A DNA stretch of 64,000 bases from Perna viridis (taxonomy: Eukaryota), in NCBI GenBank assembly GCA_037379345.1, contig CM074525.1:18092618-18156617 (forward strand). The letters are read 5' to 3'. The position numbers and the translations under genes were made by a program. The notes below the pieces were generated by a model that had not been told where the DNA came from, made no database searches, and saw only the letters and a program-made list of their open reading frames with translations. Positions 11,896-50,800 of the stretch are shown here, in pieces; position 1 is the first letter of the stretch, and each line of letters begins with the position of its first letter.

Positions 11896-11897
<2 letters not shown>

Positions 11898-11928
<31 letters not shown>
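11898..11928. repeat. (CA)n microsatellite
   Basis: About 15 CA units. Confidence 0.95.
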
Positions 11929-11930
<2 letters not shown>

Positions 11931-12479: not shown

Positions 12480-15400
12480 CTACTGTCTTTGAAAATCACA
12501 CATGTTATCTTGTGTGAAGTATTGTCCATCTAGGGATTTTAAATCCTCCAGGGTTGTTTCCAAGTCATCTTCATTAAAACTTGTATTCTGCTCTAAATCG
12601 AGAGAGAGATTTTTCTTGGCAGCCATAAATTCAATGTCATCATCCACTACATCATTAACCATGTGGTCATCAATTCTTCCATGACTGAACTTTCTTTGTG
12701 GCTTCATGACCTGTGAACTTGGGTCTGAAATAACCTCTTGTTCATTGAAATTTGAAATGTAATTGGGAGCTTGCATTGAGCTATTTTGCAAGCTTGCTTT
12801 GATAGACTCAATTTGAAATGATTTTTCCTTTTCGTCATCAGTCAGAGGTAGATTGTGTCGTACATCATTACTCTGTAACAAATGTTCTGGCAATGAGAGA
12901 TTGTGTAAATCTGTTGATGGGCGCGACTTTTTCAAATCATACTTGTTGGACATCATTGCTAACTTGTACGAAAACGGAGCTGCGAGCACCTGGTCCGAAC
13001 TACTATTATGATCCTCCGTTACCACAGCCTCTTTCTGATGTGGTGCATTAAATGCTCCCTTGTTGTTAGGCAACACCCTTTTATCAACTGTACCCTGAAG
13101 TTGTGACAATAGAGCATCACTGTAAGATGGGGGAGGCCTCTGTGACGAATGTTCATTTCTGGGTAGAATGCTACCTATACCTATAAGATCTTTCCTTAAT
13201 TTGCCCTGCTCCCTGGCTTGCATGGAGAGTACTGCTGAGTTTGGCTGAGAGCTGGCTACAGTAACAACTGGTTTGATCAGGGTTACATTACTACTGATCT
13301 GAAGTTGTGAGCCTTGAATTGGAACAAAAGACTGACCTGGTCCAACAGCATCAATTGGACTCTGCATAATATTCCGACTTGGGGTCGGGCAAGGCGATTG
13401 TAACGGGTAAGGAGTAGATGTTTGGAAACGTGGAGATATAGTCAATGATACCGGACTGAACATATTGGCATCACTAGCAATGCTCTGAGCCGAGTCTGCT
13501 CTTGTTGACATAAAACTCGAGTTATATCCTGATGTAACTGATGTGTCACATGTTAGAGTATGAGACACAGGTGTGGGATTGAGTATAGGGCTTGCCCCTA
13601 CGCTACCATAACCAGGGTCTGAGAATGGTGTCTGATTGGTTACTCTATCGACAGAAGGTTCCCGTCTCTTCATTGTTGAGGAATGTATTGGACTAGGGAA
13701 AAGTGTTGGCGTTTGAACAGATCGTCTATCAACAGCAGAACTGGTCCGTTCCACTGATGGTGTTCTCTGTCTTCTACTGACTGGTCTTTGTGGACTAGCA
13801 AACTTTCCCTCATCCAGATTTGTAGGTTTTTCAAATCTCTGAACTGACCCAGACTTGTTTGTTTCCATGATTAAATTTTGACTAGCAAGCATTGCACTTG
13901 GCAAACTTTGGCTATGAATTGAGATTGTGTTAGTATTTCCCATAGGTGAAAGATCATTTGTAAATGTTGAGCTCCGGTTCAAACCTTCAGAGTAGTCCAT
14001 ATTTTGTTGTTTTAAGCCCAATTTGTCAATAACTTGATTATTGCCATCAAAACTGGAATAATTGGCACCGTTACTTTCAATCTCTGCAGAAATTCTACCC
14101 GTTACAATATCTGTTATGAAATCAGCTACATCTTTGGGCAAGTCACTGTCTTCTTCCATCGGTGTGTTTTCATCAGAGGTCATACTAAAACCTGAACTAC
14201 TCTGAAGAATCCTAGAGAGATCTTGTTCTTGGAGATTTTCAATATTGTTCATATTCTGATGTGATTTAGTAGCTGTTTCATTAACTGACTGAGCTGGTGT
14301 TAGTAGAATATGGGTGTCACCTAACTGATTTGCCTGGAAACTCTCACAGAGATGAGTAGAAACGTAAGTGGAGACTATAGCATCACCTGTAGCACAGTTA
14401 AGCCGAGGCTGTGGAGAAGGTACTGAATTAGGCTGACTAAACCCTGTCTCATGTTTGTCCATTTTTTGAAGGAAAGTTCTGACACTTTGATCAAGCTTTG
14501 ATTTTTCCTTCAACAATTGTTGTTGAGATTTCCTCCATGATAAAGAGTTCACCCCAACTGATGCAGATTGGACTATTTTCTGTGGATGATTATTTGTAGG
14601 ATGTTCTTGCTTATCGAGATCTACCAAGGCATCAATCTCAAGCATGCTTATATCAGGATAATGCTGGCTTCTGCTTTGTTTCAATGCTGATGTTTTTGAC
14701 ATTATACCAGAATATCCTTTATCTATCTCAATTGTACATGATCTGCTTTCTTTCCTGCTGTCATTGTTTTCTTCAAACAGATCCAATTCTATGATATCAT
14801 TTTCATCAGCAGAATTAAGACGTTTTCTTCCAAAACATCTAAATGGAGCTCCATCAGAGTTAAGGAACTTTCTTTTCCTACCACCAGGTGGCTCAATCTC
14901 AGAAGAACATCTGGATCCTGGTCTAGAATGTACTATCTGGTCCCCATCTTCAATTTTAGCAAACTTTGATGGTGTTTCACAACTAACTTCATCCATTTTT
15001 CCACCTTGCATTCTAATCAGATCATCAATATCCATTGTGTCCTCATCATTCAAGTTGGGACTTTCGACACTCTTCTTTTTCTCCCAGGATTCTTCGTTTT
15101 TCTTCTCACCATCTTTATCTAAGCAGAGTGTATTTGGTCTGGTTGCAGGAGATTTCTCAAGCGCCTTTTCTACCATCTGTGGAACTGGGTTAATTACATA
15201 AACTATGTCCCCAGACTTGCCAACAGGAATGAGGCCAGGAGGTATAACCTGTCCACTCTGAAACTTTTCTATCATTTCAGCACTGGCAATTAACGTGTTA
15301 GGTGTAGGCTGTTTTGGCATGCCTATGGCAAACAGATTTTTCACGCTAGCAGGCCCATCACCTCTCTCTGCTGGAATAATGAATGATCCAGCAGATGGTA

Positions 15401-17731: not shown

Positions 17732-20700
17732 CTAAAACAGATAAAAAGTTACAATGACACAGTGTTTCACATATCAGTCTAGGTAAGAATCAAGCCTTTG
17801 GTGAAACCCCACCATTTTGACAGTGTATTTCTTGTGCAATCAGGCAAGCACTTAAAAGTGTCTGAAGTTCAAAATTTACTCTAGATGCGGCAGCCAGCCT
17901 TCTCTTAAATTGCAAGAATCTTGCAAAGTCGGGAAAAGGTGAATGATTTTACAATTGTCAAATGACATATGGTTTGAATAACGCCTGAGTTTCGAAAGGC
18001 CTGTCTGCTGCGGTAAGTAAGAGAGGAAACGAACTTCTGCTGTCACGTTGAGCTTGACAATCATGATCAAGGAATAAGAATATTTTTTTTATTTTTGGTC
18101 AAATGAGTTACAACATAAGTGTTTTTATTTAGAGCTGGATGATGGCAAAAATCACTGGATATTGGTGTAATATTTCCAGTTATTCTGATTTCCCCAGCCC
18201 GTGAATTCTTTTCTTCCTGAGATGTTCCTTCTATTCAAAAACTTAATGAATACACTGTAACATCATTGAAATGCAATGCCATTGAACATTTCATGGGCAG
18301 ATAACTGTGTCACAATCCTTAATCTTTCATCATTCTAATGAATAATTTTCATATACAGTGATGCAGATATCAAGAAAAAATAATTTAATACAGAGAACAC
18401 TTCCTCAATTGAAACTATATTGGCATATCACTACATTCTTACATGCATGTTTCAGATATTTCCCATTTTGCCTGATTCTTACATAGGCTTATACCATGTA
18501 CATGATGACTGATTAAGGAGGTAGATCTAGGGTAAGGGACACAACTCTTAAAAATCATTGGAACGTTTGTATTCAGAATTTTACATCAATCTTACATTTT
18601 TGTTTATAAGCATCTAATTAACTTGGATTCATTTTATTCTGCTTCAATGAAAGCTTGAAAGACTTTGGTGAAATTGAATATGTCCCTTACACTAGGTCTA
18701 CCTCCTTAAAATAACGATGTGCTAGTAATAGGTTACAATTACATTATGGTTCATTAAATAATTCCATTGACAGAGGGATTCATTCAACAGTTACAATGAC
18801 TTATTGATTGAATGTTAGTTACAACAGTATCAGTTTTGTATGCAGTCTAGTTTTCTTCTCTTCAGTTTGTACGTTTTATATTTTTCTGTAGTGAACTCAT
18901 CACTACAGAAGTTCTATGGTCGTCATCATGAACTTGTGGATCGTTCAGGTGTATCCATCTGTGCCATGAAAACTGTTCAGCTTTCCTTTCCTTTTCCTTG
19001 TATTTTATTCATTTCAATGTCATATATTTCAATGATTAGTTACAGTGACACTTTTTTTTGTAGTTATGTTTCTCAATCGGGCTTTAGAAAATGATTTTAT
19101 GTTCCAAAATAAGTGCAGTCCATATTATCACCTATTGGTATCATTACCTACACAATGTAATCATATTCTACAATGTGTAAACAGAAAATAACAGACAGAC
19201 AGTTTTACTATAAAAGACCTGTCAACTGAGAGATATAAGTAAAAAGCAGTGGAAGAGCTGAAAACACCTAGCGAAGGGGAGGGTTGCAATTGTCATGCTG
19301 CAGAGTGAGTGATATTAGCCATCTGATTATTTCTAAATGCATAAAGAAGAAGGGGAGAGTTGCATTTGTCAAAGGAGACTACTGTTGGCTTTAAAACATT
19401 TAAATGCATTTTCAAGAAGCATCAAATTGAAATTGAATATTTGGAAAAACTAAAACATCAAACAAATTTGGATAAGAAATGAAAAAAAAAGGTCTTTTTT
19501 TTTTAAACTGTAATATGAACATTTAAATGCATAAAACAGTAGTATGAGCCAAACGTCATGAACATTACACTTAAATAGTATTGGCTGACAGGTCTACAAT
19601 AATAAAATCTTTTTAAAGTCATACATGACTTGTACACGAAAAACCAACCTTTAATGTTCTGAATGCCGGCATCTTCCATGGCAGCGATGACAGTGAACGC
19701 TGCCACAGATTTACTGTTAACACATAGATTACTGATGAGGTACTCTGCCAAGTCTTTGATTCCCTGGAAGTTAGCATTAAGTAACTTGTGTGCCCATTCA
19801 CAGACTAATTGGCAGGAGGCTGTGTGGATTTCATCATCTTCATTTCCTGGCTGTGAAGTTAAAACAATATGTATAATAGATTACTGAAACAAGAAGTTGT
19901 CAGTCTAAAATTTGTTGTAGGTATTGAAGTCACAATGATTTGTTTATGAAATCATTAATTAAAACTAATTTTACATGTACAACTTACAAAAGATTCCTTA
20001 TATTGTCTATTGGACTGCCATTAGGTCAATTAATATGAAGCAGGTTTAATCTATAAGAGGATGAGGTTGAATAATCATGCCTTTTACAGTTTTCCATCAA
20101 CTATGATAAATTCTTTTTCGTATTTTAACAAAATTTTAAAATGGTAGTCATTAACTGACAAAGATTTTGTTTTTGTTAAAGATATGAAACTAAAAAGGAT
20201 CCTCACTCAATATAACAGGTTAACTTCCAGTTGGACTCAAACTGGACTTTCAGTGCTTCTAAGGTTAAAGTTTAAATCTGTACAGTAATGAGGACTTCAT
20301 CCTTTATATACTTTGGATTATCTCCCTTATAAGCATTTAACTTCATATATATCTTCATATGATGTCCAACTTTCATTCCAAATCACATCACAAATTCATT
20401 GACAAGTTGATGTACATGTAAGTAAAGTTTACAAGGACCACTGATGGATAAATATTCCAATATAACTCTGTAACGGTTTGTAAGAGTACATGTACGAACA
20501 AAAATGTCTTAGTTAAAACTCCTATATCACAACCTAACTGAAAATAAGACAATTAGGACAGAATATAATAATAGGAGGTGTGTTATGACTGCCAATGAGA
20601 TAGTAATCCACCAAATGCCAAGCAACGAAGAATAAAAGTTCTACAGGTCATCAGAAGCTGGGGAGAACATTCTTTCTACTTTAATGCAATTAAAGTTAAG

Positions 20701-23700
20701 ATATTATAGGTGTGATAAATAGGCCTATCTAAATAGCCATACTGATTAGTACAAAAAATCAACATATTACTGAAAATATAACACACAAACATGTAAACTG
20801 AGGAAACCACTCTCAGAAAACAGCAATAAGTATTGTGAAATTAAATTCAAGGGGTCATACCAACTACCAATTAGGTATCCATTAACCCAAATTTTTAAAC
20901 TGATTTCTTTTTTTGTACTTAAACAATACTTACAGTAGTCGTGGGTGCGATCTCCAGTTCTGGTAATGTAGGAGGCTGTACATCAAGCTTCTTTCTGAGC
21001 CCTCCATAACAATATGTGCAACAGAGTCAAGGATAAAAATATCGATATTTTTGATAGGTCATAAATAGGTCAAGTGAACATCAAAACAAAAATTCATTCT
21101 GTACAAATGACATCAAATGAAAGAAGGATTTATTGTGTAAAAATATATTCTATATTGTCATTTAAAAAAAAAACCTACAAAATACAATTTTAAGCCTTTT
21201 TTTCTTAATCAATTTTTATCAGTTGTATTTCACAGGAATACTGTGAAAGTACTTTTATTTGTGGGTACCAATTTTTGTGGTTTAGGGGAAATTGATCAGT
21301 TCATAGATTCTTGAATTTGTGAATTTGACAACTCTATCATACAAATGGGGAACTTCCTTTATGTTGAGAACCCAAATTTCGTGGTTTACAAGACCAACAA
21401 AAAAATGGTACCTGACGAACAATAATAATTTCACAGTATCAAAAATTGTTAATTTGTCAGTCATGCTGTTAAAAATTTTAGTTATCTACTTTGAAGTACA
21501 ATTACTTAAAATTGTTTATTCTAATTTCAATTAATTTCAACCATATTAAAAATCAAGAAATTGAGCAGAAGACTTTTTCAATATCTGCAATACACTCAAA
21601 AAGATTTAGACAGCTTCGAGCATAAATAATTTGAGCTGACTTTGAACTTAGGTTAAATGACCGGTAATACATGCACAGAATAAGAGATTTTTACGTCAAG
21701 ACAGAAAATATCCGTATAAGGCTGATAGGACAAAATGTGATGCTTCATTGAGACAATCCAGGGATGATTTAACCAGGTCTACAAACAAAGCAGAAATTGG
21801 CAAAATTGGAAATAAATATATAGTAAAAAAAGAATCTGACAGTAAAATCTGAATGAAACAGGGAATTCCGTGAAAAAACGGAAAAAAAAGCATCACTGAC
21901 ATTCAAATCTGGTGTTACTCTGTTCATTGTCAATTCTACTTAAAATTGTAAGCGTAAATCACAGTATAATATGTTTGAGTATCGCGACAGTTTACTGAAA
22001 TAAAATATTAGGTAGTAAGTACAAAAAAAAACGTTTTTTTACTATATATTTATTTCCAATTTAAGTATCACGACAGTTTACTGAAATAAAATATTAGGTA
22101 GTAAGTACAAAAAAAAAACTTTTTTTACTATATATTTATTTCCAATTTAAGTATCACGACAGTTTACTGAAATAAAATATTAGGTAGTAAGTACAAAAAA
22201 AACGTTTTTTTTACTATATATTTATTTCCAATTTAAGTACCACGACAGTTTACTGAAATAAAATATTAGGTAGTAAGTACAAAAAGAACGGTTAAAGTTG
22301 ATGGTAGTCAAGGATATCTAGATTGTCCTCGTTGCCCAAGTCTTCGTGGTTTAACGTTTGGAAAGACGGATTTCATTAACTTCCCAAAGTCCGCTGTACT
22401 TAAAGCCTTGATATCATGGGTTTCACAATACCATCTGAAAAAATATAAATATCTATCTATAAGTAAAAATAAAGATCCATGGCCTTTGTTCAATTTTCTG
22501 TGAAATAAAATGGCTCTTGTGATCTGACAATAGTGTGCTCAAGTGGGATGACAACCTAATATTGTACATTAGTACATTCAGTGTTTTGAGGAGTTGCTTC
22601 TATTACCTAGGACTGCACACTGAAAGTAAGGTTATAGGTAAGTGTGTCAACCATATGAGTCTGCTTAACTGATCCAACTTTAGGGGTAAATATTAGGAAA
22701 TACAAGCAAGTATATATTTTCTTTATGTTCAACTAAATTTTACCCAAAAGTTTGGTAAACCAGCTTAAAATCTACAGGCCATGGACTACTTGGCGACTGA
22801 CAATTTTTATCCCAGATTTGTTACTCTGTAGGTATGATTTTAGTTACTTTATGTTCTTTGCAGTGTATGTCTGTTTTCCATGTTTGGTCTTTGTCCCTGG
22901 ATTACATTCTTTTGATTTCCACTAGAACCTTGGTTCCCTTGATTACTCTTTTTGTCCTTATGCAATATGTATTTTGTTGTTTTGGAGTTACTAGTAACGG
23001 TGGTCTAAATCTTGTAGAAAGCCGCTTTAACAGTAGAAAAGTCACATTGCATTCTGAATAAGGGATCCCAATCAACTTCACATCCGGTCATACAAAATAT
23101 CATGATTTAAGGAGGTAGATCTACGGTAAGGAACATAACTCTTATAAATCATTGAAACATTAGTATTCAACATTTTACATCAATCTCATGTAAACATCAA
23201 AGTAACTTGGACTGATTTCATTCAGTTTCAAATGAAGGCTTGGTAGGCTGAGGTAAAATTGAATATGATACAAACATATCACTGATTTAAATAGTTATGT
23301 CCCTTACCCTAGGTCTACTTCCTTAAGCATTTACAGTGTTTCATGGTTATTAGGGTATTTTTTGGTCTGTTTGGAAAAATAAATGTGTCTTTTAAAACTT
23401 AAATAAACCTTTAAAATATGAATAAAATTGAAGTATATAGATATACATGAAGTTGATTTGTAACAAGCATTCTTATTGGACATTCCCTTTATGCAAATCT
23501 GGTTTTTTTGTATAATGTTTTGGTCTGTGACATTATTAACATAGATTATTTCACACTCTGCAATTCTAATAATAATAATAATAAATTATACAAAATGTTA
23601 AAATCAGAAACATTGCTTAAAAAATGATTTTGAAATATGTCATTTACAAAACAGTGTACATGTATTGTAATAACGATGTCACAACTAGTGACTTGTACAT

Positions 23701-26700
23701 GCGTGGAAAATAAAATTAGTTTAGCCGTACTTATAATCCTCATAGACATCCTGTTTGGGTAGACATATTTGTTCATCTTCCTCCAGGTGTGATTTTATCC
23801 ATGTATATGTCTGAGCCTGCTGTGTTCTGTTTGGTTTCTGTATTCCCACTGATGTAGGAGTTCTGAGAAAATAGAAAAAAAATGTACATGTACATGTATA
23901 TGTGCTGATAACTAGATACATGTAATCTAGATATCAAAGACAAGGAAAAGTTTTAGTGAATTCTTTTTGAAAAATAACAAATTGGCTTTTCGTCTATGTT
24001 ATCTATTACAAAAACTTCTGTCAAAGATAAATGGAAGAAGTTAGCACAAACAAGGAGAAGTTATCGCTCATTTTTTTTTTTTCATTTACATCTAAAATAG
24101 GCCTTGGTTCATTGTATGTTTACTATTAACTCAAACATCTGGTAATTCTGACTGTGATGGATAATATCTACTGGTTATAATCTTCATTGATTCTTCCAAC
24201 CTTATTTTATTCAAACTTGCCAAAGGTGCAAACTAATGTCGGTCCGAGGTCAGGGACTAACAGTCTCTGACCTAGGACCTCTGAAATTTTTTTTACATGT
24301 TACCTAGCTTTTGTTCTTACTTTCTTAAATCTTTGCAGGAGTCCCCTGTAGGTAACTTCAGATACAGAAACAGCTTCTCTACATCTGATAAACTTTTTAC
24401 TTCACTCTGAAAAAAAAAACCAAAAAAAAAAAACAGTAAAATTGACATTGATTTTTGTAAAATGGTTCGGTACAATGTGCCTACTTCAGCATTCATTCAG
24501 ACCTAATTTTCAATGGTTTAAAAATTCATGTAGCAAAAAGCAAAAATAATATCTATAAGGCCAAAATAAAAATATATGTGTTTCCCATTTACAAGTACAT
24601 TGTTTCAAAATGGGATAGGTAGGTATTTTTTTTGTTCTTTTTTGACAGGGTTGAATGAACATGGACATAGTATGTTGACACAAAACTGACCAGTTTGACT
24701 TGCATACAATCCATACTAAATCTTTAACTAGTAAATGGGACTGTACCTCAAAAGCATTTTCTGGTTTTGGGGTCAGTGCACGTGTTGCACTCTACAACAA
24801 GTGTGTGGCATTTAGGTAATTCTCTGTGGCATATTGTGAAAACCAGCAATGTTTGATGGTAAGCAGGCAAAGAATACTGTTCCAAGTTGTTTCCAAATGC
24901 ACAGCCAGCAGACTTCTTGTGGCCAACAAGTGTGCTGCCATTGTTGTTTTGGACAGGAACACAGACATATCATAATTTTTTGCTGGATTTTTTATTTTAC
25001 CCCAAAAAGCGTAAAAAAAAACTATGGGACCAGATAGGGTAAGTCGGGTAATCAAAAACACACCAACTTTTTTGGCCTGATAATCATATAAAAATTCTAG
25101 AAAATTTGATTGGCTGTTGTGTTATTGTCTACAAAATCTGATTGGTTGTTTGTTTCACATTGTTTATAACACCGCATTGGTTGGAAGCCACATTGTGATA
25201 TTTCTCATGCCATTTTCCAGCAACAAATGGTGACCTCATTGTTGGAAGAGTAATCAAGGAAACCAAGGTTATAGGGGTAATCAAAAGAACGCAATCCAGG
25301 GACAAAGACCAGACATGGAAAACAGACATACACAACAAAGAACATAAAGTAACTAAAATCATACATACAAAGTAACAAAAGCAAATGAGCAACTCGGATG
25401 AAGGCATAAATTTCTGCCATGGCAGATGTTGAATGTCAAGCAGATAAATATTCACAGAGAAAAAGGTTTTATTACTTTTAAAATATAAATATCACAAAAC
25501 ATCAACTAAGTGTAACTTTATATATTTACAATATCTAACCAAACTAGTCAAAATATTTATTGATTCACTTTTTATATCTATTAGATAATAAATTGACATA
25601 TATGATGTAATAATATCAATATTTCAACAAAGAAGTCATCTTCACATCAAAGCTATTTTTTTTGTTATAAAACACAGATGGCAATATACGTATACCTGAA
25701 CATGTACATGTATATACATTTTGTACTATAATTTCATGGAATGTAATATAAATTTTGGAAATCTCTCTAATAATCAGATGGGGTGATTCATTCAAAAACC
25801 TGCAATTTAATGTACCAAATTCACTTCTTTTTCGTATTCAGAAACAGTTACAGAACGTATAATCAGTCTTAGGCCATACAAAAAAAAATGCCTAAGTTCT
25901 CATGTCACTTTTTTTTTCAATTGATGCAGGAGGGAGGCTTTTTTATTTTTTTTTGATCAGTAGCAAGTTTTCTTTTTTTTTTGAGAAATTTCAATGAATT
26001 GAACAATTCTGTAAACGTGCAGTGGGTTGAGAAGTTAAATAAAATACTTCATGGCATTGAAACTTTACTGCAATATGAGATGTGGCAAGTAATAAAAGCC
26101 ATCTCTCAGCCACGAGACAAACTTTTTTAAATGTTCAATGATAAATAACAGCCTCATTCGCATCATACTTTTTACCTTTCTGTTAAGCGCGCAGATGACT
26201 CCGTTAACTAAATAAGGGTCAATTCTGGACTGAATATGGAAATTTCCGGTACAGATATCAAATTTATGGATTTTACCGTAATAAAAACCCCAGATGCAGG
26301 ATTGTTTTTAGGGATGCAGCGGGGCCTGAGAACCTAGCATTTCTTTTAGCCTTATTCAGTTGTGCACTTCCAAGATAAAAATTCTATAGTCACTTTGAGA
26401 AAGTTAAATTGTTTTGGATTCAGTTTAAATTGGTTGATTTCAGTGAGAGATGAACGCATGGGTTTCTCTAAAAGATCTGTATACAGAAAGGACTAATGTT
26501 AAGTAGCAAATGTAGACCCTAAAGCATCCTTCTGTTCCTTTGGGGTTTTTTCTACAGACATGAATCACCTCCACTATACATTGCACGTAGTGTCTGAATT
26601 TTATATGGATTGGTACTAAATACATGTTGTGTACACTTACTACTATTCTGTTGATTGTATTCTGAGCTTCTTTGCTACAATTAGAAAAAACAGATACAAA

Positions 26701-28370
26701 TAAGTTATATATTATGTAATGTCCCCAAAAAAATACACCGTCCATGCGAGACCAGACAGGGCAAATTTTGTTTTCATCATTCTGTGCTAATTTGCAAGTG
26801 CCTGTTGTTGTAGAGTAGTAGAGCTACATGTAAACGTATCTGCTTTCTTTGTAAGTTTGTCTCACCCTGAACTATAATCACTAATAAAAACTGAGTATAA
26901 AAAGTTGTTAACTCCATAATGCAGATTGGGAATATCATAACCAGTCAAAATAAGGCCAAAATACACATGTACATATGTACATGTACATGTCCATGAATAT
27001 AATCAATATTTTTATTTTTCAAATTGCCTAAATGGTAATAGGTGATGAAGCTCATTCTTAAATGTATAGAAATTCATCTAAATTTTTATCATAATGACCA
27101 CATGAGAAACTTTAATCAAAGCAAAAGGCTACATCTCTATCTATTAAAGCTTTTGCAATGTAGTAAAACACCTGCTAAATTAAACATTTTGAAGACCCAC
27201 ATGTTATTTGATTGGAACTCTTGGGACATTATCAAAAAAATCTACTTCTGATTTTAGTAAAACAAGACTCTTTGCTGTACCGAGAACTGCTTTACCAATA
27301 AAATTACAAATATTTGGAATGTCCTTTTTTTCTGGGTTATCCTAAATCAAATGTTGTACAAACGGTAAATGAAATTAATTCCTAATCCATTTTATTCAAA
27401 AGGGAACCTATTCAATGCTTCACTTGCACTTAAGGTAAATGCCTTACTCATATTAAGATATCATTTTTTTGTTTTATTTCATTTTGAAAATAGACAGATA
27501 GATAGCTTTATTTAGATTGAATATCAACATACATTTTTACTATTACATTCATACATCACAAATACATTCACATCACAATATAAATACACTTAGATCATAA
27601 TATAAATACATTTATACATTACTAAGTTCACATTCGTATTGATACTTAAAATATTACCTAGCCAATAATGTATCTAGGCCAAATGTAAAAATTCAAAGTT
27701 TAAGCCATAAAAGTATGTAACAGTTGTTGATATTTAACCTAGGATGGCCCATAAAAACTTTACAGCTTATTTCCAATGGGGTCCTTTATAGCAATTAAGG
27801 TTTTAAAAAAATAATGCATACTGCACATGCTCTTTGTGGGAAACACTATAATGTTGTAAATATCTATGGTTCCTCTTAAAAAAATATTTTGCAATCTGTG
27901 ATCTGGTAAATTAGGATCCATTAACTGAAATTAACCTCTAATACAATCAAATAAGTTGGACATACAACAGTTAACTGTTAAAATAGGCATTTGAAAAAGC
28001 ACTGAACTACAAAATTAAGAAAATACAGTCACTGGAATGAGTAATTCATTATTTGTCATGAAACTGGGTCACACTGAAGTGAAGGTACATACATCATTGT
28101 CATGTATTGGCAACCCGTTTTGGGCAATGACAAGCTATTAATCTAGTCACAAATTTACCTGAGAGATGATTCGAGGCCTTCCTCTATGTGGGAGAACCTA
28201 GATTTTGTCTCCTTCTCTCCTACATCACTATTATTCGACGGTGACATTTTGTAAACATTAGCATTGTCAGAAATTTGTGTTGCTTGTTTCGCATTTTGTG
28301 GCCAAAAAACAGGATCGATTTGAACAATATCTACTCTAAATGCATCTTGACATGCCAATACACTATTCAT
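12480..28370 (-). CDS. RFX7: RFX7-like (RFX5/RFX7 subfamily) winged-helix transcription factor; join(complement 28159-28370, 26641-26674, 24321-24406, 23731-23862, 22318-22434, 20934-21015, 19649-19850, 12480-17731), ~2038 aa
   Basis: The exons splice in phase (6117 nt) and give VEKLFLYLKLPTG, the RFX DBD [74 protein letters not shown] and ASCQLVCEWAHKLL. These match the recalled human RFX7 N-terminus block by block. The start Met is uncertain (28370, or the downstream MSPSNN). Confidence 0.93.
18517..18705. mobile_element. Kolobok-like MITE with TTAA TSD
   Basis: TTAA|GGAGGTAGA...TCTACCTCC|TTAA; TIR ~25 bp. Confidence 0.8.
18894..18975 (+). mobile_element. Penelope-like fragment encoding SSLQKFYGRHHELVDR
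   Basis: Matches ~3955-4030. Confidence 0.7.
19649..19850 (-). CDS. RFX7: RFX7 exon 7 (PGNEDDEIHTASCQLVCEWAHKLL...AAFTVIAAMEDAGIQNIK)
   Basis: CACAG acceptor, G|GTTGG donor; conserved post-DBD helical domain of RFX5/7. Confidence 0.92.
20934..21015 (-). CDS. RFX7: RFX7 exon 6 ([27 protein letters not shown])
   Basis: Follows the AC acceptor of the U12 intron; GTAAGT donor; completes the DBD and carries a PxLPxL motif. Confidence 0.93.
21241..21436. mobile_element. TA-flanked MITE (Tc1/mariner-like) inside the U12 intron; related pieces near 38320-38490 and 51230-51350
   Basis: TA|CTGTGAAA...TTTCACAG|TA with an extended imperfect IR. Confidence 0.7.
21978..22287. repeat. Minisatellite, ~87-bp unit x ~3.5, near-identical copies
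   Basis: CGACAGTTTACTGAAATAAAATATTAGGTAGTAAGTACAAAAA occurs four times. Confidence 0.95.
22318..22434 (-). CDS. RFX7: RFX7 exon 5, second half of RFX DBD
   Basis: TTTCAG acceptor; [38 protein letters not shown]; ends at the ATATCCTT U12 donor. Confidence 0.95.
22817..22951 (+). mobile_element. 3'-end fragment of the Penelope-like element (RFX7 intron 4)
   Basis: Matches ~4205-4337. Confidence 0.8.
23111..23322. mobile_element. Kolobok-like MITE, same family
   Basis: TTAA|GGAGGTAGA...TCTACTTCC|TTAA. Confidence 0.8.
23731..23862 (-). CDS. RFX7: RFX7 exon 4, first half of RFX DBD
   Basis: TTCTCAG acceptor, GTACGG donor; [30 protein letters not shown]. Confidence 0.95.
24321..24406 (-). CDS. 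RFX7: RFX7 exon 3 (SEVKSLSDVEKLFLYLKLPTGDSCKDLR)
   Basis: polyT-CAG acceptor, GTAAGA donor; RFX5/7 N-terminal EKLYLYLQLP-type motif; missed by the ORF track. Confidence 0.92.
25246..25400 (-). mobile_element. 3'-end fragment of the Penelope-like element (RFX7 intron 2)
   Basis: Reverse complement of ~4185-4337. Confidence 0.8.
26641..26674 (-). CDS. RFX7: RFX7 exon 2, 34-nt micro-exon (KEAQNTINRIV)
   Basis: TTGTAG acceptor and GTAAGT donor; phase-consistent; positionally equivalent to the recalled human KTVQSKVDCIL segment. Confidence 0.75.
28159..28370 (-). CDS. RFX7: RFX7 coding exon 1 (MNSVLACQ...IEEGLESSL)
   Basis: Open frame ending at donor AG|GTAAA; phase 2 fits the next exon; lies at the edge of a CpG-containing promoter-like region. 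Confidence 0.65.
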
Positions 28371-28465
28371 GCTGCAAATCACAGCTATGTAACGTCTTCA
28401 ACGGAATAAAATTTAAAAGTTTTTACAATCAAGCGATTTAGTTTGATCTCCATTGTTGGTATTTT

Positions 28466-28480
28466 TACTGCGCATGCTCT
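28466..28480. promoter_or_regulatory. NRF1-like motif TGCGCATGC in the putative RFX7 proximal promoter
   Basis: About 100 bp upstream of the putative start, in a locally CpG-retaining stretch; partial match to YGCGCATGCGCR. Confidence 0.4.
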
Positions 28481-29269
28481 TTGAGCGAAACGCTCTAATG
28501 TCGTAAACATTTATGGTCCCTCTTAAAAAAATTGAGATGTGCTTTACTTACGTTTTCTTTTCTTTTTTCGTATTGTCAATAGATGGCATTGATTTTCAAC
28601 AATTAATATATTCCAAAAAATTTCAAATACTAAAATTACGACATTTATCTAAATTCATGCTCAGTTCCGCTCTCGATCCCGTTTTCTTTTATCACATAAC
28701 CGGTAAGGATTTTTTATTCACATTTATTTTTTTACAAGGGCTGAGCGAATATTTCAGATTAGATGCCCTTAATGCCGAGCGCATCGAGCCAAACGATTTA
28801 GGCCGGGTAAATTTGTGGAAAATCGATCAAGATTTCGTGCTAAAATATACATTTGTTTCAATAAAACGTGGACACGAGCGCCCCTCCGCCCTATTTGAAT
28901 CTTCCACTGCGTAATTCAAAAGATAATTTGCATGAATGTTGTGAATTAAAATATGCCAGTGGAAATCAAGTGCCCGACCTAGACTCTTTTCAAAACTCAA
29001 AATGTCTATTAAAAAATATGTACAGCCTGGAATCCCGCAAGGAAAGGCTTGATTTGAAATCAGGTTTACTTTCCATTTCACATTATGTTCTAGACAATTG
29101 TCACTTATGAGTTGCTTTATAGTACCGTTGGTTTTGCACTTATTCATTCACTTACACTTGTATCAATCTTAAACTTAAACATAGGACAGTTATCTGTTTA
29201 TAATGTACATGTACTTGTATCAGTAGTTGTAAGGTGGAGGTGTGACATATGTCGAGATGTCCAACGGCT

Positions 29270-29455
29270 GATATACCAGACAAGCTGCATGGGGCCGAAG
29301 ACGTCAGAGCTTGTCCCATACCAAAAACATGAGACTTTTCTAGAAAGTCGAAATTCTGTAAATTCAAGGAAATACAGTTTTTTTTTATTATTATTTTATG
29401 TACATCAGACAACACTATTGACATGTTTTTCACTCTGTGCTAAATTTACACACCG
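29270..29455 (+). repeat. Dispersed repeat, second copy at ~60172-60360
   Basis: Shared ACGTCAGA.CTTGTCC..GAATTCTGTAAAT..TACATCAGACAACACTA.TG.CATGTTTTTCACT. Confidence 0.7.
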
Positions 29456-30033
29456 TCTATTTTTATAAAATTATACAATAGTTTACTCCATGATTCTCGT
29501 GATTCAACCATTGACCGTATGAGCAATCTCGGAATACTATCGTATAACCCCTATACAAAAATATTACAAAATGCAGTCTACGGGGACAAAATAAAAAGCT
29601 TTTTAGTTTTATTTTTGCAATTGTAAACTTTTCAATCATTAAGCTAAAACATTGTGTGTCGTGAAGCATACATTTTTTCATTATAACCTTACTTATACAA
29701 CTATGTTCTTTTAAACGATCTAATTCTATCAATATCTAAGTTGAAAATGTTTCATACGATTATACGGAAAATTGATTGTTAAATGGTGGTACATAGTTTC
29801 CTTTCGTTGTTATTTTCTATGTGGGTATAATTTTGCATTTAAGGGAAAGACCACCTTTGCATTAAGTTAGGCTCTTCTGAAAAATCATACACATGTAAGA
29901 CTCATGTAACCTAAAATAAATAGCCTTTAATGCAAAATGCTCTTTTGTAAAATGCACACAGCTATGCGAAATTCGAAATCCTTGAGATATATGTGAATAG
30001 CCAAAACTCTTCTATCTGAACATGGGGGTTTGC

Positions 30034-30136
30034 TATCAAATATGCAGCCCCACTAGTATATAACCACGGGGCTATATCAAGGAATTAAATATATTTAACT
30101 CTTTGGTTATATACTAGTGGGGCTGTATATTTGATA
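30034..30136. repeat. 33-bp inverted repeat (hairpin); single arms recur near 55195 and 60915
   Basis: TATCAAATATGCAGCCCCACTAGTATATAACCA ... TGGTTATATACTAGTGGGGCTGTATATTTGATA. Confidence 0.85.
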
Positions 30137-30398
30137 ATGGGAGCAAACCCCTCTGATTAGATTCCTACATCCTTTCTGTGAAAGAAATATACACGCAAAA
30201 CAATCATTAGAAATAATAAAGTTACTATTTAAGACTCCGGAAACCCCTAAAAAATCAATGCAACTGTTTCTGTTCATTTTTTGCTGTATACACCTTCTGT
30301 AGTTTGTGGCATGCTGTCTTTATACCTGTATTTAAACGAGAGAATTATTACATATGATATGAACACACGATCATATCCTGTGTATTTTCCTACAAAAT

Positions 30399-31773: not shown

Positions 31774-31895
31774 AAAGAGTAATCAAGAGAACCAAGGTTA
31801 TAGCGGTAATCAACAAAATGTAATCCAGGTAAAAAGACCAGACATGGAAAACAGACATACACAACAAAGAACATAAAGTAACTAAAATCATACAT
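31774..31895 (-). mobile_element. 3'-end fragment of the Penelope-like element
   Basis: Reverse complement of ~4220-4337. Confidence 0.75.
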
Positions 31896-33384
31896 GAAGA
31901 ATAAGAAACATTATTGCGTCAGCATTTACAAAAAATATCAATTATGAGCGGCTTGACAATAATATAAACAAGGAGTTAAATGTAAATCCTTGATATAAAT
32001 AAAGAAAATATTTGCAATCACGAAATATTATACATAAACAATTATACGGGGTTGAGTAGTAACTTAGTAACTGCAGAGAGCAAAATTGCATGTAATTTAG
32101 ATATACTGTAAATAGCTATGAATGTAAATGAGACCTAATACCCCAACTCACTCTTAAGAAGCACACGATGTTGTATTTTTTTTTTTTTTAGATTTGGCCA
32201 CTAACAATAATCAATAATAATTGGAAAAAAAATATTTTAACCTTAACAGGCGATATGCTGGGCCATCTATAGCACAAAATGATACTCATTTTCAATACTC
32301 TGCATATAATCTATCTTGTTGAATCTGGTTAATATATCGCCCAAGAAGTCACAGAAAATACTACCATAGTTATTATGATTGAAATCAATTACTTACATGT
32401 ATATAGTTATAATTCTGAATATTCTCTATATATTGGCTCTGCCCCATCCCACAATTGTTATTGAACATCGTTTATCCATCACACTGTCTCCATATGTCTT
32501 AATTAATAATGTCAATCACTTGTATGTAATTCTCTGCTCTATCAAAGGGTCTTTTCATGGGAATAAACGATCTTATCTTATCTTCTGACCATGCTGAATA
32601 AATGACAATTTATTGGTATCACATGTGACACTGTAATTTGGCAGACGGAAGGAAAAGGAACAGGTATGGTAAAACGCAACAAATGCACCATCGTATAACT
32701 GCAGGGAGCAGAGAAACTACCAATATTGGGGTCTCACTAATTGCCGACAAGAAGCGTCAAGAAGCAACAAGAAATTGATATTGTAAGAAGTTATATTATA
32801 AAAAAAAAACAATTTGCGCATGCATTGTTGATATGAATAAGCCATTTAAGGTTAAAATACAAAAGATAGTGACAAAAGAATGAAGAGGAAATGATTCTTT
32901 GAGCAAAATAAATTTTGTGACTTTAATAGTAAAGTTATACATCTGTATATATACAAATTTAAGATGCTATATTTCTTTGTGGTTTTTGCGTTATACACGT
33001 GCTTAGAGTTGACCAGAGTTCCAAAATGATCGTTGTTTTGTTTTTGTTTTGTTTTGTTTTTGCTTTTGTTTTTTGGGTTTTTTTGGGTTTTTTTTCTCAA
33101 TTTCTTTATTTTTTAATTTTAAAATGAAATAAAAATGTTTAAAAATTTTGAGGCACGTGTTCCAGCTATTTAAGTCTCATCAGTAACGCTTTGCCAAAAA
33201 TAACAGAATTAAATGCAAATTTAAAAAGACCAAATTATTTCTTCGGATTTTCTTTGTTTTATAAATTTGTAATTTGTTCAATTTTTGAATTTAGAGATAT
33301 TGAAGTAACTTGTGTTTTCTAATTTTTATTTTATTTTTGTTAGTCTCATCTGGAGCGCTTTGCAAATTTGGAATAGGTTTTTAT

Positions 33385-34482
33385 ATTAGATACTTTAAAT
33401 TCTGAATATATTTTAAGTCTCTAGGTTGGTGGTCAGAATTAAAATTTTCAGTGAAAACCTGTTTCACTGTTTTACCTCATTCAATATCATTTTGCACTTT
33501 ATTTTTGGTAGCTGGCGAAGTGCGAATGTACTTTTGCTTTGTAATTCTTGCGTTCCCATGTCTATTTATGTCATCAATGGGATAAGAACTAATATATTCG
33601 GCATATGCTTTAGAAATAGTGTCATTTGAATGGCCAGGCATTTTCTCAAACCAACATATTCTCTTCTTGTATTGCTTATCCCTTTTTAGAGATACGTAGT
33701 AACGCTTTAGCACCAATAAATTATAATCGTCTGGTTGAGGTTCTAAAGGAATAAATTCCTTTTTTATTTCTTTGCAATAAAGGCCATTCATGTTGACACA
33801 TGACTGAAGAGTGCCGTCAACTTTTCGTACATAATATGTAGTTTTGGTGGATGTTGTTTTGGAATCCAATGTTCCACAATCATCCCAATACCCCACTTTC
33901 TTTGATTGTGCTCTCTTATTTGTGTTTGCAGTATGATCTAACCCAATTCTAGGTGGATAGACTGACTGAATCGGACAGCCAATAACTGTTGCTGCCCCTA
34001 CGATGGCCCAGGCTGATGACCAGCTTTTGTTTGTGGCAGCACTTTTGCATGCCTGATCATAAATATTAGATACAAGTTTTATACTATCATATTTATGAGT
34101 GTCTTGTTTTGCTTTATTGGTTACAAGTTCAATGCAAGTTAAAACCCAGAGCCGACTTGCTAGGTTTTCATTGCCCGTAATATCAACCGACAGTGCATTA
34201 AAGAGACAATTGCCATTGCTAGAGACATTGATCGGTTTTCTGTCAATGAAAGATATTTTGTGCTCATTCAGGGTCTGTTTAGATACATTGTCTTGTACCA
34301 AAGCAGATTGAGCTGAATAAGTTAAGTCAGTCTCATCTATACTTCTACAGTGCGTTAAGGTATTGGACTGGTCTTTCTTTATTTTTTTTACATTTATTGT
34401 GAAACCATGATTCACATGATTCACAGTAAACACAAAGGCTTGTGCAATTTTTGCCGCAGTCTCCACAAGGATACTTTGCCAT
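33385..34482 (-). pseudogene. Frameshifted transposon ORF: PHD-like finger + vertnin-like OTU cysteine protease + N-terminal part of a MULE transposase (DDE domain missing)
   Basis: ATG at 34482 gives MAKYPCGDCGKNCTSLCVYCESCESWFHNKC. The track ORF has NGNCLFNALS..SWSSAWAI..IQSVYPP, then HGNA..KYIRT. After another frameshift comes PRDLKYIQNLKY. Confidence 0.8.
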
Positions 34483-34486
34483 TTTG

Positions 34487-34695
34487 ATTCCCTTGTCCAA
34501 GGGGAAAACCGTCTACCAAAGGGTTTGTAATACCGATGGTATTATATAACTTCACTCCCCTTACCAAAGGGGAACCCTGTTCAAAAGAATTTGGACTAAC
34601 ACCGATGGTATTAATCTTAAAAAAATTTTATTCCCTTGCCCAAGGGGAAGCCCTGCTCCTGGGAGTATCTATTTATTAACACCGATGGTATTAAT
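34487..34695. repeat. Three ~70-bp direct repeats upstream of the MULE ORF
   Basis: Each has the hairpin TCCCTTG(n)CCAAGGGGA (or a variant) and ACCGATGGTATTA. Confidence 0.8.
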
Positions 34696-36017
34696 GTCAG
34701 CGTATCAAAGCGACACTGTATGCAAATACGTAGCAAAGATTCTTACAAACGCACAGAGTCGTACTTTTGCAAGAACCAGAGTGACTGATTTGGGTCCGGT
34801 ATTTATATTAAAGATGAATAAAAAGTTCGGCTTCTTCAGCTTGGGTGTATTGAATGGATGTATAAGATGAGTTAAGTTTTGGTTTTTGTCAGCTTGTTAG
34901 AAAAAAAAATTCTGTACTAGTTACCCTTCGAACGCAAATGACGAACAAAACAACCACGCTTAGAATCATCAGCAGTGTTTTTACTTTACTTAGTTTTCTG
35001 GTCTATGGCTTCATAAATTATGATGCTAAAAAAACTTACTACGGCACATATTATTTTTAATTTTCACATCAAAAGAATCAATGTGTTTAATTCTGAAGGT
35101 TACAACTACAATTCTAGCAACCAAAACTCTTGATTGTGAGATCAAAGGGTGAGTGGCTTCTCTTAGGTAATTAATATCATAACTACCCCAATTAACAATT
35201 TAACGACCTACATGCCGAGGAAAGCCCACGTGCCAACATAAGTCAGTGGTTAACGCCTTGTTGACTGGCGCGTGGATGAATGTCATAACTTAATTAATCC
35301 GATTGGCTGATATGCATAAATATACAAATCTATCGAAATGTAGAATGATCTAGAATCCTGACATATCTGCATTCTTTAAGAATGATTTCAAATAATTTTT
35401 AAAAGTAAAAATAGCATATAACATCAAAGAAATAGATAACATATATCTTAATCTTTTGATAAAAACAGAGCATTTTTAAACTCAAATCTTTGCAAATTAC
35501 GTTATTTTCACCCTTTTCATCAATTTATTTCTTTATCATATTTTAAAATGTCATTTACAATGACATATTTGATTAATATTAGTTTCTCGAAATTTTAAAA
35601 CTTATATGGCAAATTTTTGCCAGAGACATTAATGTCTCTGTTTTTATCAACTTTGCAAACAAATAGAACCAGGGATTTATAAAATCTTACAATTACTACT
35701 ATTTTTTTCATCTTTTTATAATTCAAGCAGCAAATAAATATAGTCTCTCTCCTCTTGTCGGTATTTTTTAGTTTCCTGTCGCTAATACAATTTCTTGTCG
35801 CTTCTTGACGCCTCTTGTCGGTAATTAGTGAGACCGCAATATTGTGATGCAACAAAATAACAAAAAAAGACAGAAAAAAATATACGGTGCTTATTGGTGA
35901 ATCAATATTGATGGTCCATGCAACCGTACCATATATATTAGAACGATAGCACCCAAATGCCGTCCGAGTTTAGAAGGTAGGTGCAAATTCGCCCTCCTCG
36001 TTTTAGGTATATTCGCC

Positions 36018-36046
36018 GATTTACGGCAACAATAGTATGCGTCAAA

Positions 36047-36053
<7 letters not shown>
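36018..36053 (+). promoter_or_regulatory. TEX9 start region: X-box half-site (GGCAAC) and YY1-like AAAATGGCGG over the ATG
   Basis: Motifs read directly from the sequence; the left X-box half is poor. Confidence 0.3.

Positions 36054-50800
<14,747 letters not shown>

What the first reader, a model, noticed from the sequence alone, without database searches (positions are those of the whole stretch)
12480..50800. RFX7 and TEX9 head-to-head in an invertebrate, apparently the same pairing as in human
Seen: the two genes diverge with start codons 7.7 kb apart, and much of the spacer is transposon DNA. Recalled: human RFX7 (-) and TEX9 (+) are divergent neighbours on 15q21. Inference: the pair has been kept since the bilaterian ancestor, which would suggest shared cis-regulation between an RFX factor (RFX7 is implicated in ciliogenesis) and a cilium/centriole-associated coiled-coil gene. 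I do not know of a description of this pair as an ancient regulatory unit.
Basis: partly seen in the sequence, partly recalled or inferred. Interest (0 to 1): 0.75.

Follow-up and report, generated by a model that had tools for sequence, protein, structure and literature searches.

The report
RFX7-type and TEX9 genes head-to-head
In this mussel-like genome a transcription-factor gene of the RFX5/RFX7 type and the cilium-base gene TEX9 sit back to back and point away from each other, a neighbourhood also kept in many other molluscs and in birds, which makes it one more example of an old conserved gene pair.

Summary
A single-copy RFX5/7-class gene (RFX5_N plus RFX DNA-binding domain) runs on the minus strand from ATG 28370 to stop 12480. 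A single-copy TEX9 gene runs on the plus strand from ATG 36047 to stop 50800. The start codons are 7,677 bp apart, and at least 55% of the spacer is repeated DNA, including a 3.1-kb element with 57-nt inverted ends.

The pairing is not a coincidence. Both proteins were seen in 22 species. RFX and TEX9 carry strictly consecutive annotation identifiers in 7 of them (three Mytilus, Mizuhopecten, Potamilus, Sinanodonta, Patella caerulea) and lie two apart in 2 more. A duck GWAS paper places one variant between RFX7 and TEX9. A 2009 paper lists human TEX9 among pairs about 1 kb apart at their 5' ends, partner unnamed. Exceptions are Pinctada, Bradybaena and a crinoid.

An ancestral bilaterian pair is likely, but no intermediate phylum could be surveyed, and orientation outside this window was not checked. 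Shared cis-regulation is unproven: there are two separate CpG-rich patches about 7 kb apart and no X-box above chance, and the transcript contigs were uninformative.

This belongs to the known class of conserved head-to-head microsyntenic pairs, of which 593 bilaterian pairs were described in 2012. Interest is moderate to low.

The parts
12480..28370 (-). RFX5/7-class transcription-factor gene, from start codon to stop codon (7 coding exons)
   Evidence: tblastn with Mytilus RFX7-like proteins P0001, P0002 and P0006. Pfam RFX5_N and RFX_DNA_binding. Splice sites read.
28159..28370 (-). RFX coding exon 1. ATG at 28370, second in-frame ATG at 28247, donor GTAAAT.
   Evidence: 74% identity over 67 residues to P0002, and 83% over 29 residues to P0001. 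Sequence read. The string TGATTTGCAG directly before the ATG looks like a splice acceptor, so a non-coding exon further upstream is possible (inference).
24321..24406 (-). RFX exon 2, encoding part of the RFX5_N domain
   Evidence: Pfam PF18326 at 28.7 bits, cut-off 25. It is the only PF18326 match in the whole genome.
23731..23862 (-). RFX exon 3, first third of the RFX DNA-binding domain
   Evidence: Pfam PF02257 positions 1-30, 24.4 bits. tblastn.
22318..22434 (-). RFX exon 4, core of the RFX DNA-binding domain
   Evidence: Pfam PF02257 positions 31-70, 56 bits.
21016..22317 (-). AT-AC (U12-type) intron inside the DNA-binding domain
   Evidence: The donor reads ATATCCTT. TCCTTGAC lies shortly before the terminal AC.
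20934..21015 (-). RFX exon 5
   Evidence: tblastn at 75-95% identity to mollusc RFX proteins. Donor GTAAGT.
19649..19883 (-). RFX exon 6, a conserved region after the DNA-binding domain
   Evidence: tblastn at 87-88% identity to Mytilus.
12480..17731 (-). RFX last exon (about 1,750 codons, no Pfam domain) with its stop codon
   Evidence: ORF. No Pfam family. 46-49% identity over its whole length to Mytilus RFX7-like proteins. 81-96% of its sampled words are held in 14 runs guessed to be RNA.
28371..36046 (.). Spacer between the two start codons (7,676 bp)
   Evidence: Coordinates. At least 55% is repeated elsewhere in the genome. No Pfam-recognisable host gene.
28200..29100 (.). CpG-rich patch at the RFX 5' end (promoter-like)
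   Evidence: CpG observed/expected is 0.98-1.79 in 300-bp windows, against 0.53 for the whole window.
32721..35844 (.). Transposon-like element with 57-nt terminal inverted repeats, ending about 200 bp before the TEX9 ATG
   Evidence: Inverted repeat I4, 93% complementary. Many copies on other contigs. A 354-codon ORF gives a weak OTU hit below cut-off. No target-site duplication found.
35800..36300 (.). CpG-rich patch at the TEX9 5' end (promoter-like)
   Evidence: CpG observed/expected is 1.40-1.48, against 0.53 background.
36047..50800 (+). TEX9 gene, from start codon to stop codon (10 coding exons found; one short exon between 39800 and 41724 may be missing)
   Evidence: tblastn with six TEX9 proteins. 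Own-genome search with Mytilus coruscus TEX9 gave 8 matches, all here. Splice sites.
36047..36091 (+). TEX9 exon 1 (15 codons), inferred
   Evidence: Donor GTAAGA. 7 of 15 identities to the Mytilus TEX9 N-terminus, best of 76 candidates. It lies inside a CpG-rich patch. No transcript contig covers it in 4 of 4 runs.
45437..45693 (+). TEX9 exon 7, the best conserved coiled-coil exon, used as search query
   Evidence: 151 proteins at E up to 0.001. Ten were looked up; 6 carry a source name, 5 of those read TEX9 and 1 amphioxus entry reads 'Golgin sub A member 2'.
50726..50800 (+). TEX9 last exon with the conserved C-terminal end and the stop codon
   Evidence: 57-84% identity to the C-termini of mollusc, amphioxus, fish and gecko TEX9.

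Best explanation
This is a real, old, head-to-head neighbour pair. The genome's only RFX5/7-class transcription-factor gene and its only TEX9 gene (a basal-body and centriolar-satellite coiled-coil protein) are transcribed away from each other from a common spacer. The neighbourhood most likely dates from before the mollusc-vertebrate split. It has probably persisted because a break between the two 5' ends would damage promoter-proximal control DNA of one or both genes. This is the co-regulation class of conserved microsyntenic pairs. In this mussel-like genome the spacer has been inflated by transposon insertions, and each gene appears to have its own CpG-rich promoter patch.

Shown: gene identities, single-copy status, arrangement, repeat content, and adjacency in other molluscs.

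Inferred: bilaterian age, transcription start positions, and any selective constraint.
For: Gene identities.

Single copy: all 8 TEX9 matches in the genome lie in this locus. RFX5_N matches once in the genome. The Mytilus orthologue matches PDB RFX5 at 120.5 bits, against 48.1 bits for the RFX1 DNA-binding domain.

Adjacency elsewhere, read. Both proteins were seen in 22 species. In 19 of them both lie on contigs of identical length.
- Identifiers are strictly consecutive in 7 species: M. coruscus (CAC5422921/22), M. galloprovincialis (VDI78612-14 and XP_076081395/96), M. edulis (XP_071140191/92), Mizuhopecten (OWF49322/23, on a 201,633-bp scaffold), Potamilus (CHS0354_034069/70), Sinanodonta (ACJMK2_025152/53) and Patella caerulea (SNE40_007271/72).
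- Identifiers are two apart in M. trossulus and Mactra.
- Both genes lie on one 198,820-bp scaffold in Ylistrum.

Vertebrates: in duck an intergenic variant lies 8.94 kb from RFX7 and 16.60 kb from TEX9. TEX9 is one of ten gene pairs with about 1 kb between 5' ends in human, and the cow gene was re-annotated by a 54,675-bp 5' extension.

Framework: 593 bilaterian conserved pairs, 54.8% of them 5'-5' in human, are explained by co-regulation or regulatory blocks (PMC3514665, passages read).

TEX9 function: a basal-body role in Drosophila (passages) and shortened cilia after planarian RNAi (abstract).
Against: - No RFX5/7 gene of an annelid, echinoderm, hemichordate, amphioxus or cnidarian could be placed.
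- In the crinoid Anneissia the genes sit on different scaffolds (3.2 Mb and 0.62 Mb).
- In Bradybaena they sit on different chromosome-size contigs.
- In Pinctada the accession numbers are 855 apart on the same chromosome. The link can therefore be broken.
- Orientation was seen only here.
- The two CpG-rich patches are about 7 kb apart, so the under-1-kb mark of a bidirectional promoter is not seen.
- X-box-like sites in 27800-38100 number 4-11 per spacing variant, against 4.6-7.0 in shuffles. The strict pattern has one match in the whole window, outside the spacer, against 2.7 expected.
- In four runs that hold the RFX exon well, the TEX9 5' exons have depth 0 to about 1 and no exon 1-exon 2 joint is listed. 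That gives no sign of coupled expression. The tool warns that contigs cannot rank expression, and the runs were chosen by the RFX exon.
Confidence: 0.6

Rival explanations
1. Passive retention. The pair is ancestral but has been kept without any shared regulation. The spacer was short, so it offered little target for breakage, and molluscs and vertebrates rearrange slowly. It would be one of many neutral leftovers of ancestral gene order.
For: The link is lost in Bradybaena and loosened in Pinctada without loss of either gene. There are two separate promoter-like patches. There is no X-box. The spacer tolerates a 3.1-kb insertion 200 bp from the TEX9 ATG. Nineteen of 22 species keep both genes on contigs of the same length, as general macrosynteny would also give.
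Against: Strict adjacency is seen in five mollusc orders that split in the Cambrian, and also in birds. That is more than scrambling within a chromosome would leave for a random pair. Conserved pairs as a class exceed neutral expectation and are enriched in 5'-5' orientation (PMC3514665).
Confidence: 0.25
2. Regulatory-block model. Enhancers of the transcription-factor gene lie inside TEX9 introns, or in its long first intron in mammals. TEX9 would then be a bystander that cannot be moved away without misregulating the RFX gene.
For: The pair is a transcription factor plus a non-regulatory gene, the composition enriched among conserved pairs. Bystanders have long introns (PMC3514665). Mammalian TEX9 has a first intron of tens of kb abutting a partner's start site (PMC2688522). 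TEX9 here has 9 or more introns over 14.7 kb.
Against: No conserved non-coding element or enhancer was tested. RFX7 is not shown here to be a patterned developmental gene.
Confidence: 0.1
3. Coincidence or convergence. Molluscs and vertebrates acquired the adjacency independently.
For: Intermediate phyla were not surveyed. The crinoid has the genes on different scaffolds.
Against: For two given single-copy genes, chance adjacency is of the order of one in thousands per lineage, even within one ancestral linkage group (own estimate, not computed by a tool). The same pair is adjacent in at least 9 molluscs and in duck.
Confidence: 0.05

Closest known systems
Conserved ancestral microsyntenic pairs of the co-regulation class (Irimia et al. 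2012, PMC3514665), for example HSPE1-HSPD1
   Same: Two unrelated single-copy genes in 5'-5' orientation, with adjacency kept across distant animal lineages.
   Different: HSPE1-HSPD1 share a proven promoter of under 1 kb and are strongly co-expressed. Here the start codons are 7.7 kb apart, with two CpG-rich patches, and co-expression is untested. Whether RFX7-TEX9 is among the 593 listed pairs could not be seen, because the supplements are closed.
Mammalian bidirectional-promoter pairs with a long first intron (Piontkivska et al. 2009, PMC2688522)
   Same: TEX9 is listed there as one of ten pairs about 1 kb apart at the 5' ends in human. It needed a 54,675-bp 5' extension in cow.
   Different: The partner gene is not named in the text that I read. 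That it is RFX7 is my recollection of the human map. In the bivalve no upstream non-coding exon was demonstrated.
Genomic regulatory blocks (a developmental transcription-factor gene plus a bystander gene)
   Same: A transcription-factor gene next to an intron-rich non-regulatory gene, with the linkage kept over long times.
   Different: No conserved non-coding elements or enhancers are known or were tested here.
RFX control of ciliary genes through X-box promoter motifs (RFX1-3, DAF-19)
   Same: An RFX-family gene sits beside a ciliary or basal-body gene.
   Different: The RFX5/7 class is not the main ciliogenic class. No X-box above chance lies in the spacer or at the TEX9 5' end. The relation is one of position, not of a demonstrated regulator and its target.

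Membership tests
RFX5/RFX7 subfamily of RFX transcription factors | RFX winged-helix DNA-binding domain | tested here: met
   PF02257 at 56 bits (exon 4) and 24.4 bits (exon 3), cut-off 27. Also found by the own-genome family search at this locus.
RFX5/RFX7 subfamily of RFX transcription factors | N-terminal RFX5_N domain before the DNA-binding domain | tested here: met
   PF18326 at 28.7 bits, cut-off 25. It is the only match in the 723-Mb genome. The Mytilus orthologue matches PDB RFX5 chain 8zjr_M at E 4.7e-34.
RFX5/RFX7 subfamily of RFX transcription factors | Placement inside the RFX5/7 clade in a tree with RFX1-4, 6 and 8 | not tested
   No tree was built, because no vertebrate RFX paralogue sequences were fetched. 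About seven RFX-domain loci exist in this genome.
RFX7 proper (as opposed to RFX5) | One-to-one orthology to vertebrate RFX7, with similarity in the long C-terminal region | tested here: inconclusive
   The 1,747-codon last exon found only 12 proteins, all named ones from molluscs, and none from vertebrates. That search is word-limited. Sources name relatives both RFX7 and Rfx5. It is treated here as co-orthologue of both.
TEX9 (testis-expressed protein 9) | Collinear similarity over the whole protein, including the conserved C-terminal end | tested here: met
   Nine exons align in order to mollusc, amphioxus, fish and gecko TEX9 and to M. coruscus TEX9 at 63-92%.
TEX9 (testis-expressed protein 9) | Best hits are TEX9 and there is no paralogue in the genome | tested here: met
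   Of the 10 top hits looked up, 6 carry a name and 5 of those read TEX9. All 8 own-genome matches lie in this locus.
Conserved ancestral microsyntenic pair | Adjacency of orthologues in distant lineages | tested here: met
   Consecutive identifiers in 7 mollusc species of 4 orders, plus this window. Duck by print. Phyla between molluscs and vertebrates were not tested.
Conserved ancestral microsyntenic pair | Conserved 5'-5' orientation | not testable with these tools
   Orientation was seen only in this window. The human orientation is recalled.
Bidirectional promoter pair | Transcription start sites less than 1 kb apart on opposite strands | tested here: inconclusive
   The ATGs are 7,677 bp apart and the two CpG-rich patches about 7 kb apart, which argues against it. 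Start sites were not mapped, and the contigs gave nothing at either 5' end. Possible upstream non-coding exons are not excluded.
RFX target gene (X-box promoter) | X-box motif near the start of the target gene | tested here: not met
   There is no match with at most 1 mismatch in the spacer. Relaxed variants are at chance level.

The most novel reading that the evidence does not exclude
The RFX5/7-TEX9 divergent pair is a bilaterian-wide cis-regulatory unit. A shared control region would couple an RFX-family regulator to a basal-body gene, and would have been kept for more than 550 million years from molluscs to mammals. In mammals the TEX9 start site is still held within about 1 kb of the RFX7 start by a very long first intron.
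Probability: 0.15. Interest if true: 0.6.

Novelty: new member of a known kind. Interest (0 to 1): 0.35.

Why it matters
If the pair is ancestral and constrained, it is a compact natural test case. It would show how a head-to-head arrangement survives large changes in spacer size: 7.7 kb with transposons here, about 25 kb in duck, and a start-to-start distance of about 1 kb with a very long first intron in mammals. It would also test whether an RFX-family gene is tied in cis to a cilium-base gene.

It also fixes the annotation of two genes in a bivalve genome. Several public mollusc records name this RFX gene 'mucin-like' or 'serine-rich adhesin'.

On present evidence it adds one example to a class with hundreds of members, so the gain is modest.

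Tried and rejected
1. The look-up of encoding contigs was to give neighbours and strands in other animals. It was closed.

2. Transcript evidence. One read-laying run covered 34101-40100 in four runs from four studies. It showed no contig on TEX9 exon 1 and none of the expected splice joints. Depth was about 1 or 0 on exons 2-4, and most laid pieces came from repeats. It neither confirms nor contradicts the TEX9 5' end, and it did not cover the RFX 5' end. All runs are only guessed to be RNA.

3. X-box search, both strict and relaxed, stayed at chance level.

4. Target-site duplication of the 3.1-kb element: none found.

5. Extension of the block to MNS1, recalled as the human neighbour of TEX9. 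The only TPH-domain locus found lies on contig C5, not C15. Its identity as MNS1 was not checked.

6. RefSeq XP-number distance as a measure of non-adjacency was rejected. Patella vulgata numbers are 1,427 apart, while the sister species P. caerulea has consecutive locus tags. Pinctada is the exception, because its GenBank accessions are 855 apart.

7. The cattle BLV paper lists both genes among the genes nearest to integration sites, but does not show them flanking one site. It was not counted. The mouse thalamus paper and the lymphoma paper hold the names only in gene lists.

Searches used single exons of the window or database proteins.

9. Supplementary tables of PMC3514665 and PMC2688522 may name this pair. 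They were closed and were not requested.
Full report
**What the window is.** The window is G000:C15:18092618-18156617 of a 723-Mb assembly in 46 contigs. It is 34% G+C, with one run of 135 N at 63352-63486 that I left alone. The nearest proteins are from Mytilus: 46-49% identity over the long disordered RFX exon, 74-93% over the RFX N-terminal exons, and 63-92% over the TEX9 exons. I take it for a mytilid-like bivalve. The species was not determined.

**The RFX gene.** A 1,747-codon ORF on the minus strand (12480-17723) has no Pfam domain. Over its whole length it matches Mytilus proteins that carry PF02257 and PF18326, one of them named 'DNA-binding protein RFX7, DNA-binding protein Rfx5'.
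- tblastn of those proteins on the window finds six further upstream exons.
- Reading the splice sites gives 28370-28159, 24406-24321, 23862-23731, 22434-22318, 21015-20934, 19883-19649 and 17731-12483.
- Pfam scores the exons separately: RFX5_N at 28.7 bits (cut-off 25), and RFX_DNA_binding at 24.4 and 56 bits (cut-off 27).
- In the whole genome RFX5_N matches only here, whereas the RFX DNA-binding domain matches about seven loci.
- The Mytilus orthologue matches the solved RFX5 chain 8zjr_M at 120.5 bits and the RFX1 domain 1dp7 at 48.1 bits.

The gene is therefore the single RFX5/7-class gene. I built no tree. From recalled family history I treat it as co-orthologous to vertebrate RFX5 and RFX7, not to RFX7 alone.

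**The TEX9 gene.**
- The coiled-coil exon 45437-45693 found 151 proteins at E up to 0.001 in the representative library, mostly 300-420 residues long with the match near residues 200-290.
- Ten of these were looked up. Six carry a source name: five read TEX9 (Aplysia, two fishes, a gecko, a bird) and one amphioxus entry reads 'Golgin sub A member 2'.
- tblastn of six of these proteins maps nine exons in order, up to a stop at 50798-50800.
- The own-genome search with M. coruscus TEX9 gives 8 matches, all in this locus, so the gene is single copy.
- Exon 1 (36047-36091) is an inference. It has an ATG, 15 codons and a GTAAGA donor, phase-0 continuity with exon 2, and 7 of 15 ungapped identities to the Mytilus N-terminus. 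That is the best of 76 candidates; the next best has 4.
- A full-length TEX9 query returns 1,002 proteins at E up to 1e-10, of which the best 120 are listed. They run from sea anemones to tetrapods.

**The arrangement.** The two genes diverge. The ATG-to-ATG distance is 7,677 bp, or 7,800 bp with the second RFX ATG at 28247. The finding's limits, 12480 and 50800, are exactly the two stop codons.

The spacer holds an element with 57-nt inverted ends (32721-32777 and 35788-35844). This element has dozens of copies on other contigs at 74-96% identity. Two further repeated stretches are present. Together the listed repeats cover about 55% of the spacer, which is a lower bound. The element ends about 200 bp before the TEX9 ATG.

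Of the ten longest spacer ORFs, nine have no Pfam hit, and the element's ORF has a sub-threshold OTU hit.

CpG observed/expected peaks at 28200-29100 (up to 1.79) and at 35800-36300 (up to 1.48), against 0.53 for the window. I read these as two separate promoter-like patches. This is an inference from the usual CpG depletion of methylated invertebrate DNA.

Directly before the RFX ATG the sequence reads like a splice acceptor, and a GTAAGT lies about 180 nt further upstream. A short non-coding first exon inside the same patch is therefore possible.

I used instead the source names, accession numbers and contig lengths that the protein tools return.

Both proteins were seen in 22 species.

Strictly consecutive identifiers, 7 species:
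- Mytilus coruscus: CAC5422921 TEX9 and CAC5422922 RFX, on a contig of 2,061,550 bp.
- M. galloprovincialis: VDI78612/13 RFX and VDI78614 TEX9, on a scaffold of 385,445 bp; also XP_076081395/96.
- M. edulis: XP_071140191/92.
- Mizuhopecten yessoensis: OWF49322/23 and XP_021355894/95, on a scaffold of 201,633 bp.
- Potamilus streckersoni: CHS0354_034069/70.
- Sinanodonta woodiana: ACJMK2_025152/53. A second TEX9 entry, ACJMK2_025238, lies on the same contig.
- Patella caerulea: SNE40_007271/72.

Two apart:
- M. trossulus
- Mactra antiquata

Both on one 198,820-bp scaffold:
- Ylistrum balloti

Contigs of the same length only:
- M. californianus (XP numbers 16 apart)
- Patella vulgata
- Mercenaria
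- Liolophura (a chiton)
- Gigantopelta
- two Haliotis species
- Saccostrea echinata
- Pinctada imbricata

Against adjacency:
- Pinctada GenBank accessions are 855 apart.
- Bradybaena has the genes on contigs of 75.7 and 53.2 Mb.
- The crinoid Anneissia has them on scaffolds of 3.2 Mb and 0.62 Mb.
- Saccostrea cucullata is too fragmented to judge.

Identifiers give order, not strand.

The RFX search listed only the best 120 of 219 hits, mostly arthropods. No deuterostome, annelid or cnidarian RFX5/7 gene was available to pair with its TEX9.

**Vertebrates, from print.**
- Four papers in the searched library hold both names.
- A duck GWAS table annotates one intergenic indel as 'RFX7 8.94, TEX9 16.60', next to an intronic RFX7 variant 11 kb away (PMC11577198, passage read). 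The genes are therefore neighbours about 25.5 kb apart in duck. That intronic variant lies about 2 kb inside the gene end that faces TEX9. This fits the 5' end of RFX7 better than its long last exon, which is my inference.
- A 2009 study of bidirectional promoters describes ten gene pairs more than 50 kb apart at their 5' ends in cow, 'compared to a 1 kb intergenic distance in human'. It lists TEX9 with a 54,675-bp extension, and nine of the ten were validated after re-annotation (PMC2688522, section 7 read). The partner is not named there. A search for RFXDC2 with TEX9 found no paper.
- The other three papers give only gene lists.

**Function and mechanism.**
- TEX9 is a cilium-base protein in print. 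There is a basal-body localisation and axoneme defects in Drosophila (gene CG4681), with earlier localisation to centriolar satellites (preprint 10.1101/2022.12.28.522111, passages read). Planarian RNAi shortens cilia (PMC13133735, abstract and legend read).
- The framework for such pairs is that of Irimia et al. (PMC3514665, passages read). It describes 593 bilaterian conserved pairs, 54.8% of them 5'-5' in human, explained by co-regulation or by regulatory blocks with bystander genes.
- My best reading is an ancestral 5'-5' pair held by promoter-proximal constraint.
- Passive retention is the main rival, and a regulatory block with TEX9 as bystander is a lesser one.
- Nothing tested here shows shared regulation. 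There is no X-box above chance (one match in the window, outside the spacer, against 2.7 expected; 4-11 relaxed matches against 4.6-7.0 in shuffles). The two CpG patches are about 7 kb apart.
- Transcript contigs cover the RFX exon well in 14 runs guessed to be RNA, but barely touch the TEX9 5' exons in the four runs laid. This comparison is biased by how the runs were chosen, and the tool says it cannot rank expression.

**Novelty.** The searched full texts do not discuss this pair. Main-text searches of the microsynteny survey show no mention of either gene (listing). The kind of thing is well known. I file it as a new member of a known kind, with moderate to low interest.

**Earlier notes of this scan.**
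- One concerns the transposon at 32729-35836. My inverted-repeat and copy-number results agree with a DNA transposon. I did not test its Mutator, PHD or transposase assignment.
- The other concerns an AT-AC intron at 21016-22317. The ATATCCTT donor and the TCCTTGAC branch-like site that I saw agree with it.

Noticed in passing
window 21016-22317 (minus strand): The intron inside the RFX DNA-binding domain begins ATATCCTT, has TCCTTGAC shortly before its end, and ends in AC. These are the marks of a U12-type AT-AC intron. A 2026 preprint title reports a minor intron in zebrafish rfx7b (10.64898/2026.08.20.745718, search listing only). Whether it sits at the same position was not checked.
   Followed up: partly
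window 38700-39300: A stretch in TEX9 intron 3 has summed contig depths of about 4,700-18,700 in all four runs laid, against 0-350 elsewhere. Many short contigs and loose ends map there. It is probably a highly represented, possibly transcribed, short repeat.
   Followed up: no
window 27819-27885 and 28466-28532: A 67-nt direct repeat (87% identical) flanks RFX coding exon 1. One copy lies in intron 1 and one in the CpG-rich patch upstream of the ATG. Both contain a GCGCATGC or GCACATGC core.
   Followed up: no
window 25243-25398, 30626-30787, 31772-31908: Three copies, direct and inverted and 85-90% alike, of a repeat of about 90-140 nt lie in RFX intron 1 and in the spacer. Matching pieces occur elsewhere in the genome.
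   Followed up: partly
G000:C5:13340777-13343217: This is the only TPH-domain (PF13868) locus found in the genome. If it is the MNS1 orthologue, the human TEX9-MNS1 neighbourhood (recalled) is not kept here. Identity was not checked.
   Followed up: partly
public records of mollusc RFX5/7 proteins: Several RefSeq names for this gene are misleading: 'mucin-2-like' (Liolophura), 'mucin-4' (Patella vulgata) and 'serine-rich adhesin for platelets-like' (Haliotis, Gigantopelta). All of these carry the RFX domains. Two TEX9 entries are named 'Golgin subfamily A member 2' (Mactra, Branchiostoma belcheri).
   Followed up: no
Sinanodonta woodiana entries ACJMK2_025152 and ACJMK2_025238: Two TEX9 entries lie on the same 190-Mb contig. 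The partial one is next to the RFX gene and a full-length one is 86 locus tags away. This may be a local duplication or an assembly duplicate.
   Followed up: no
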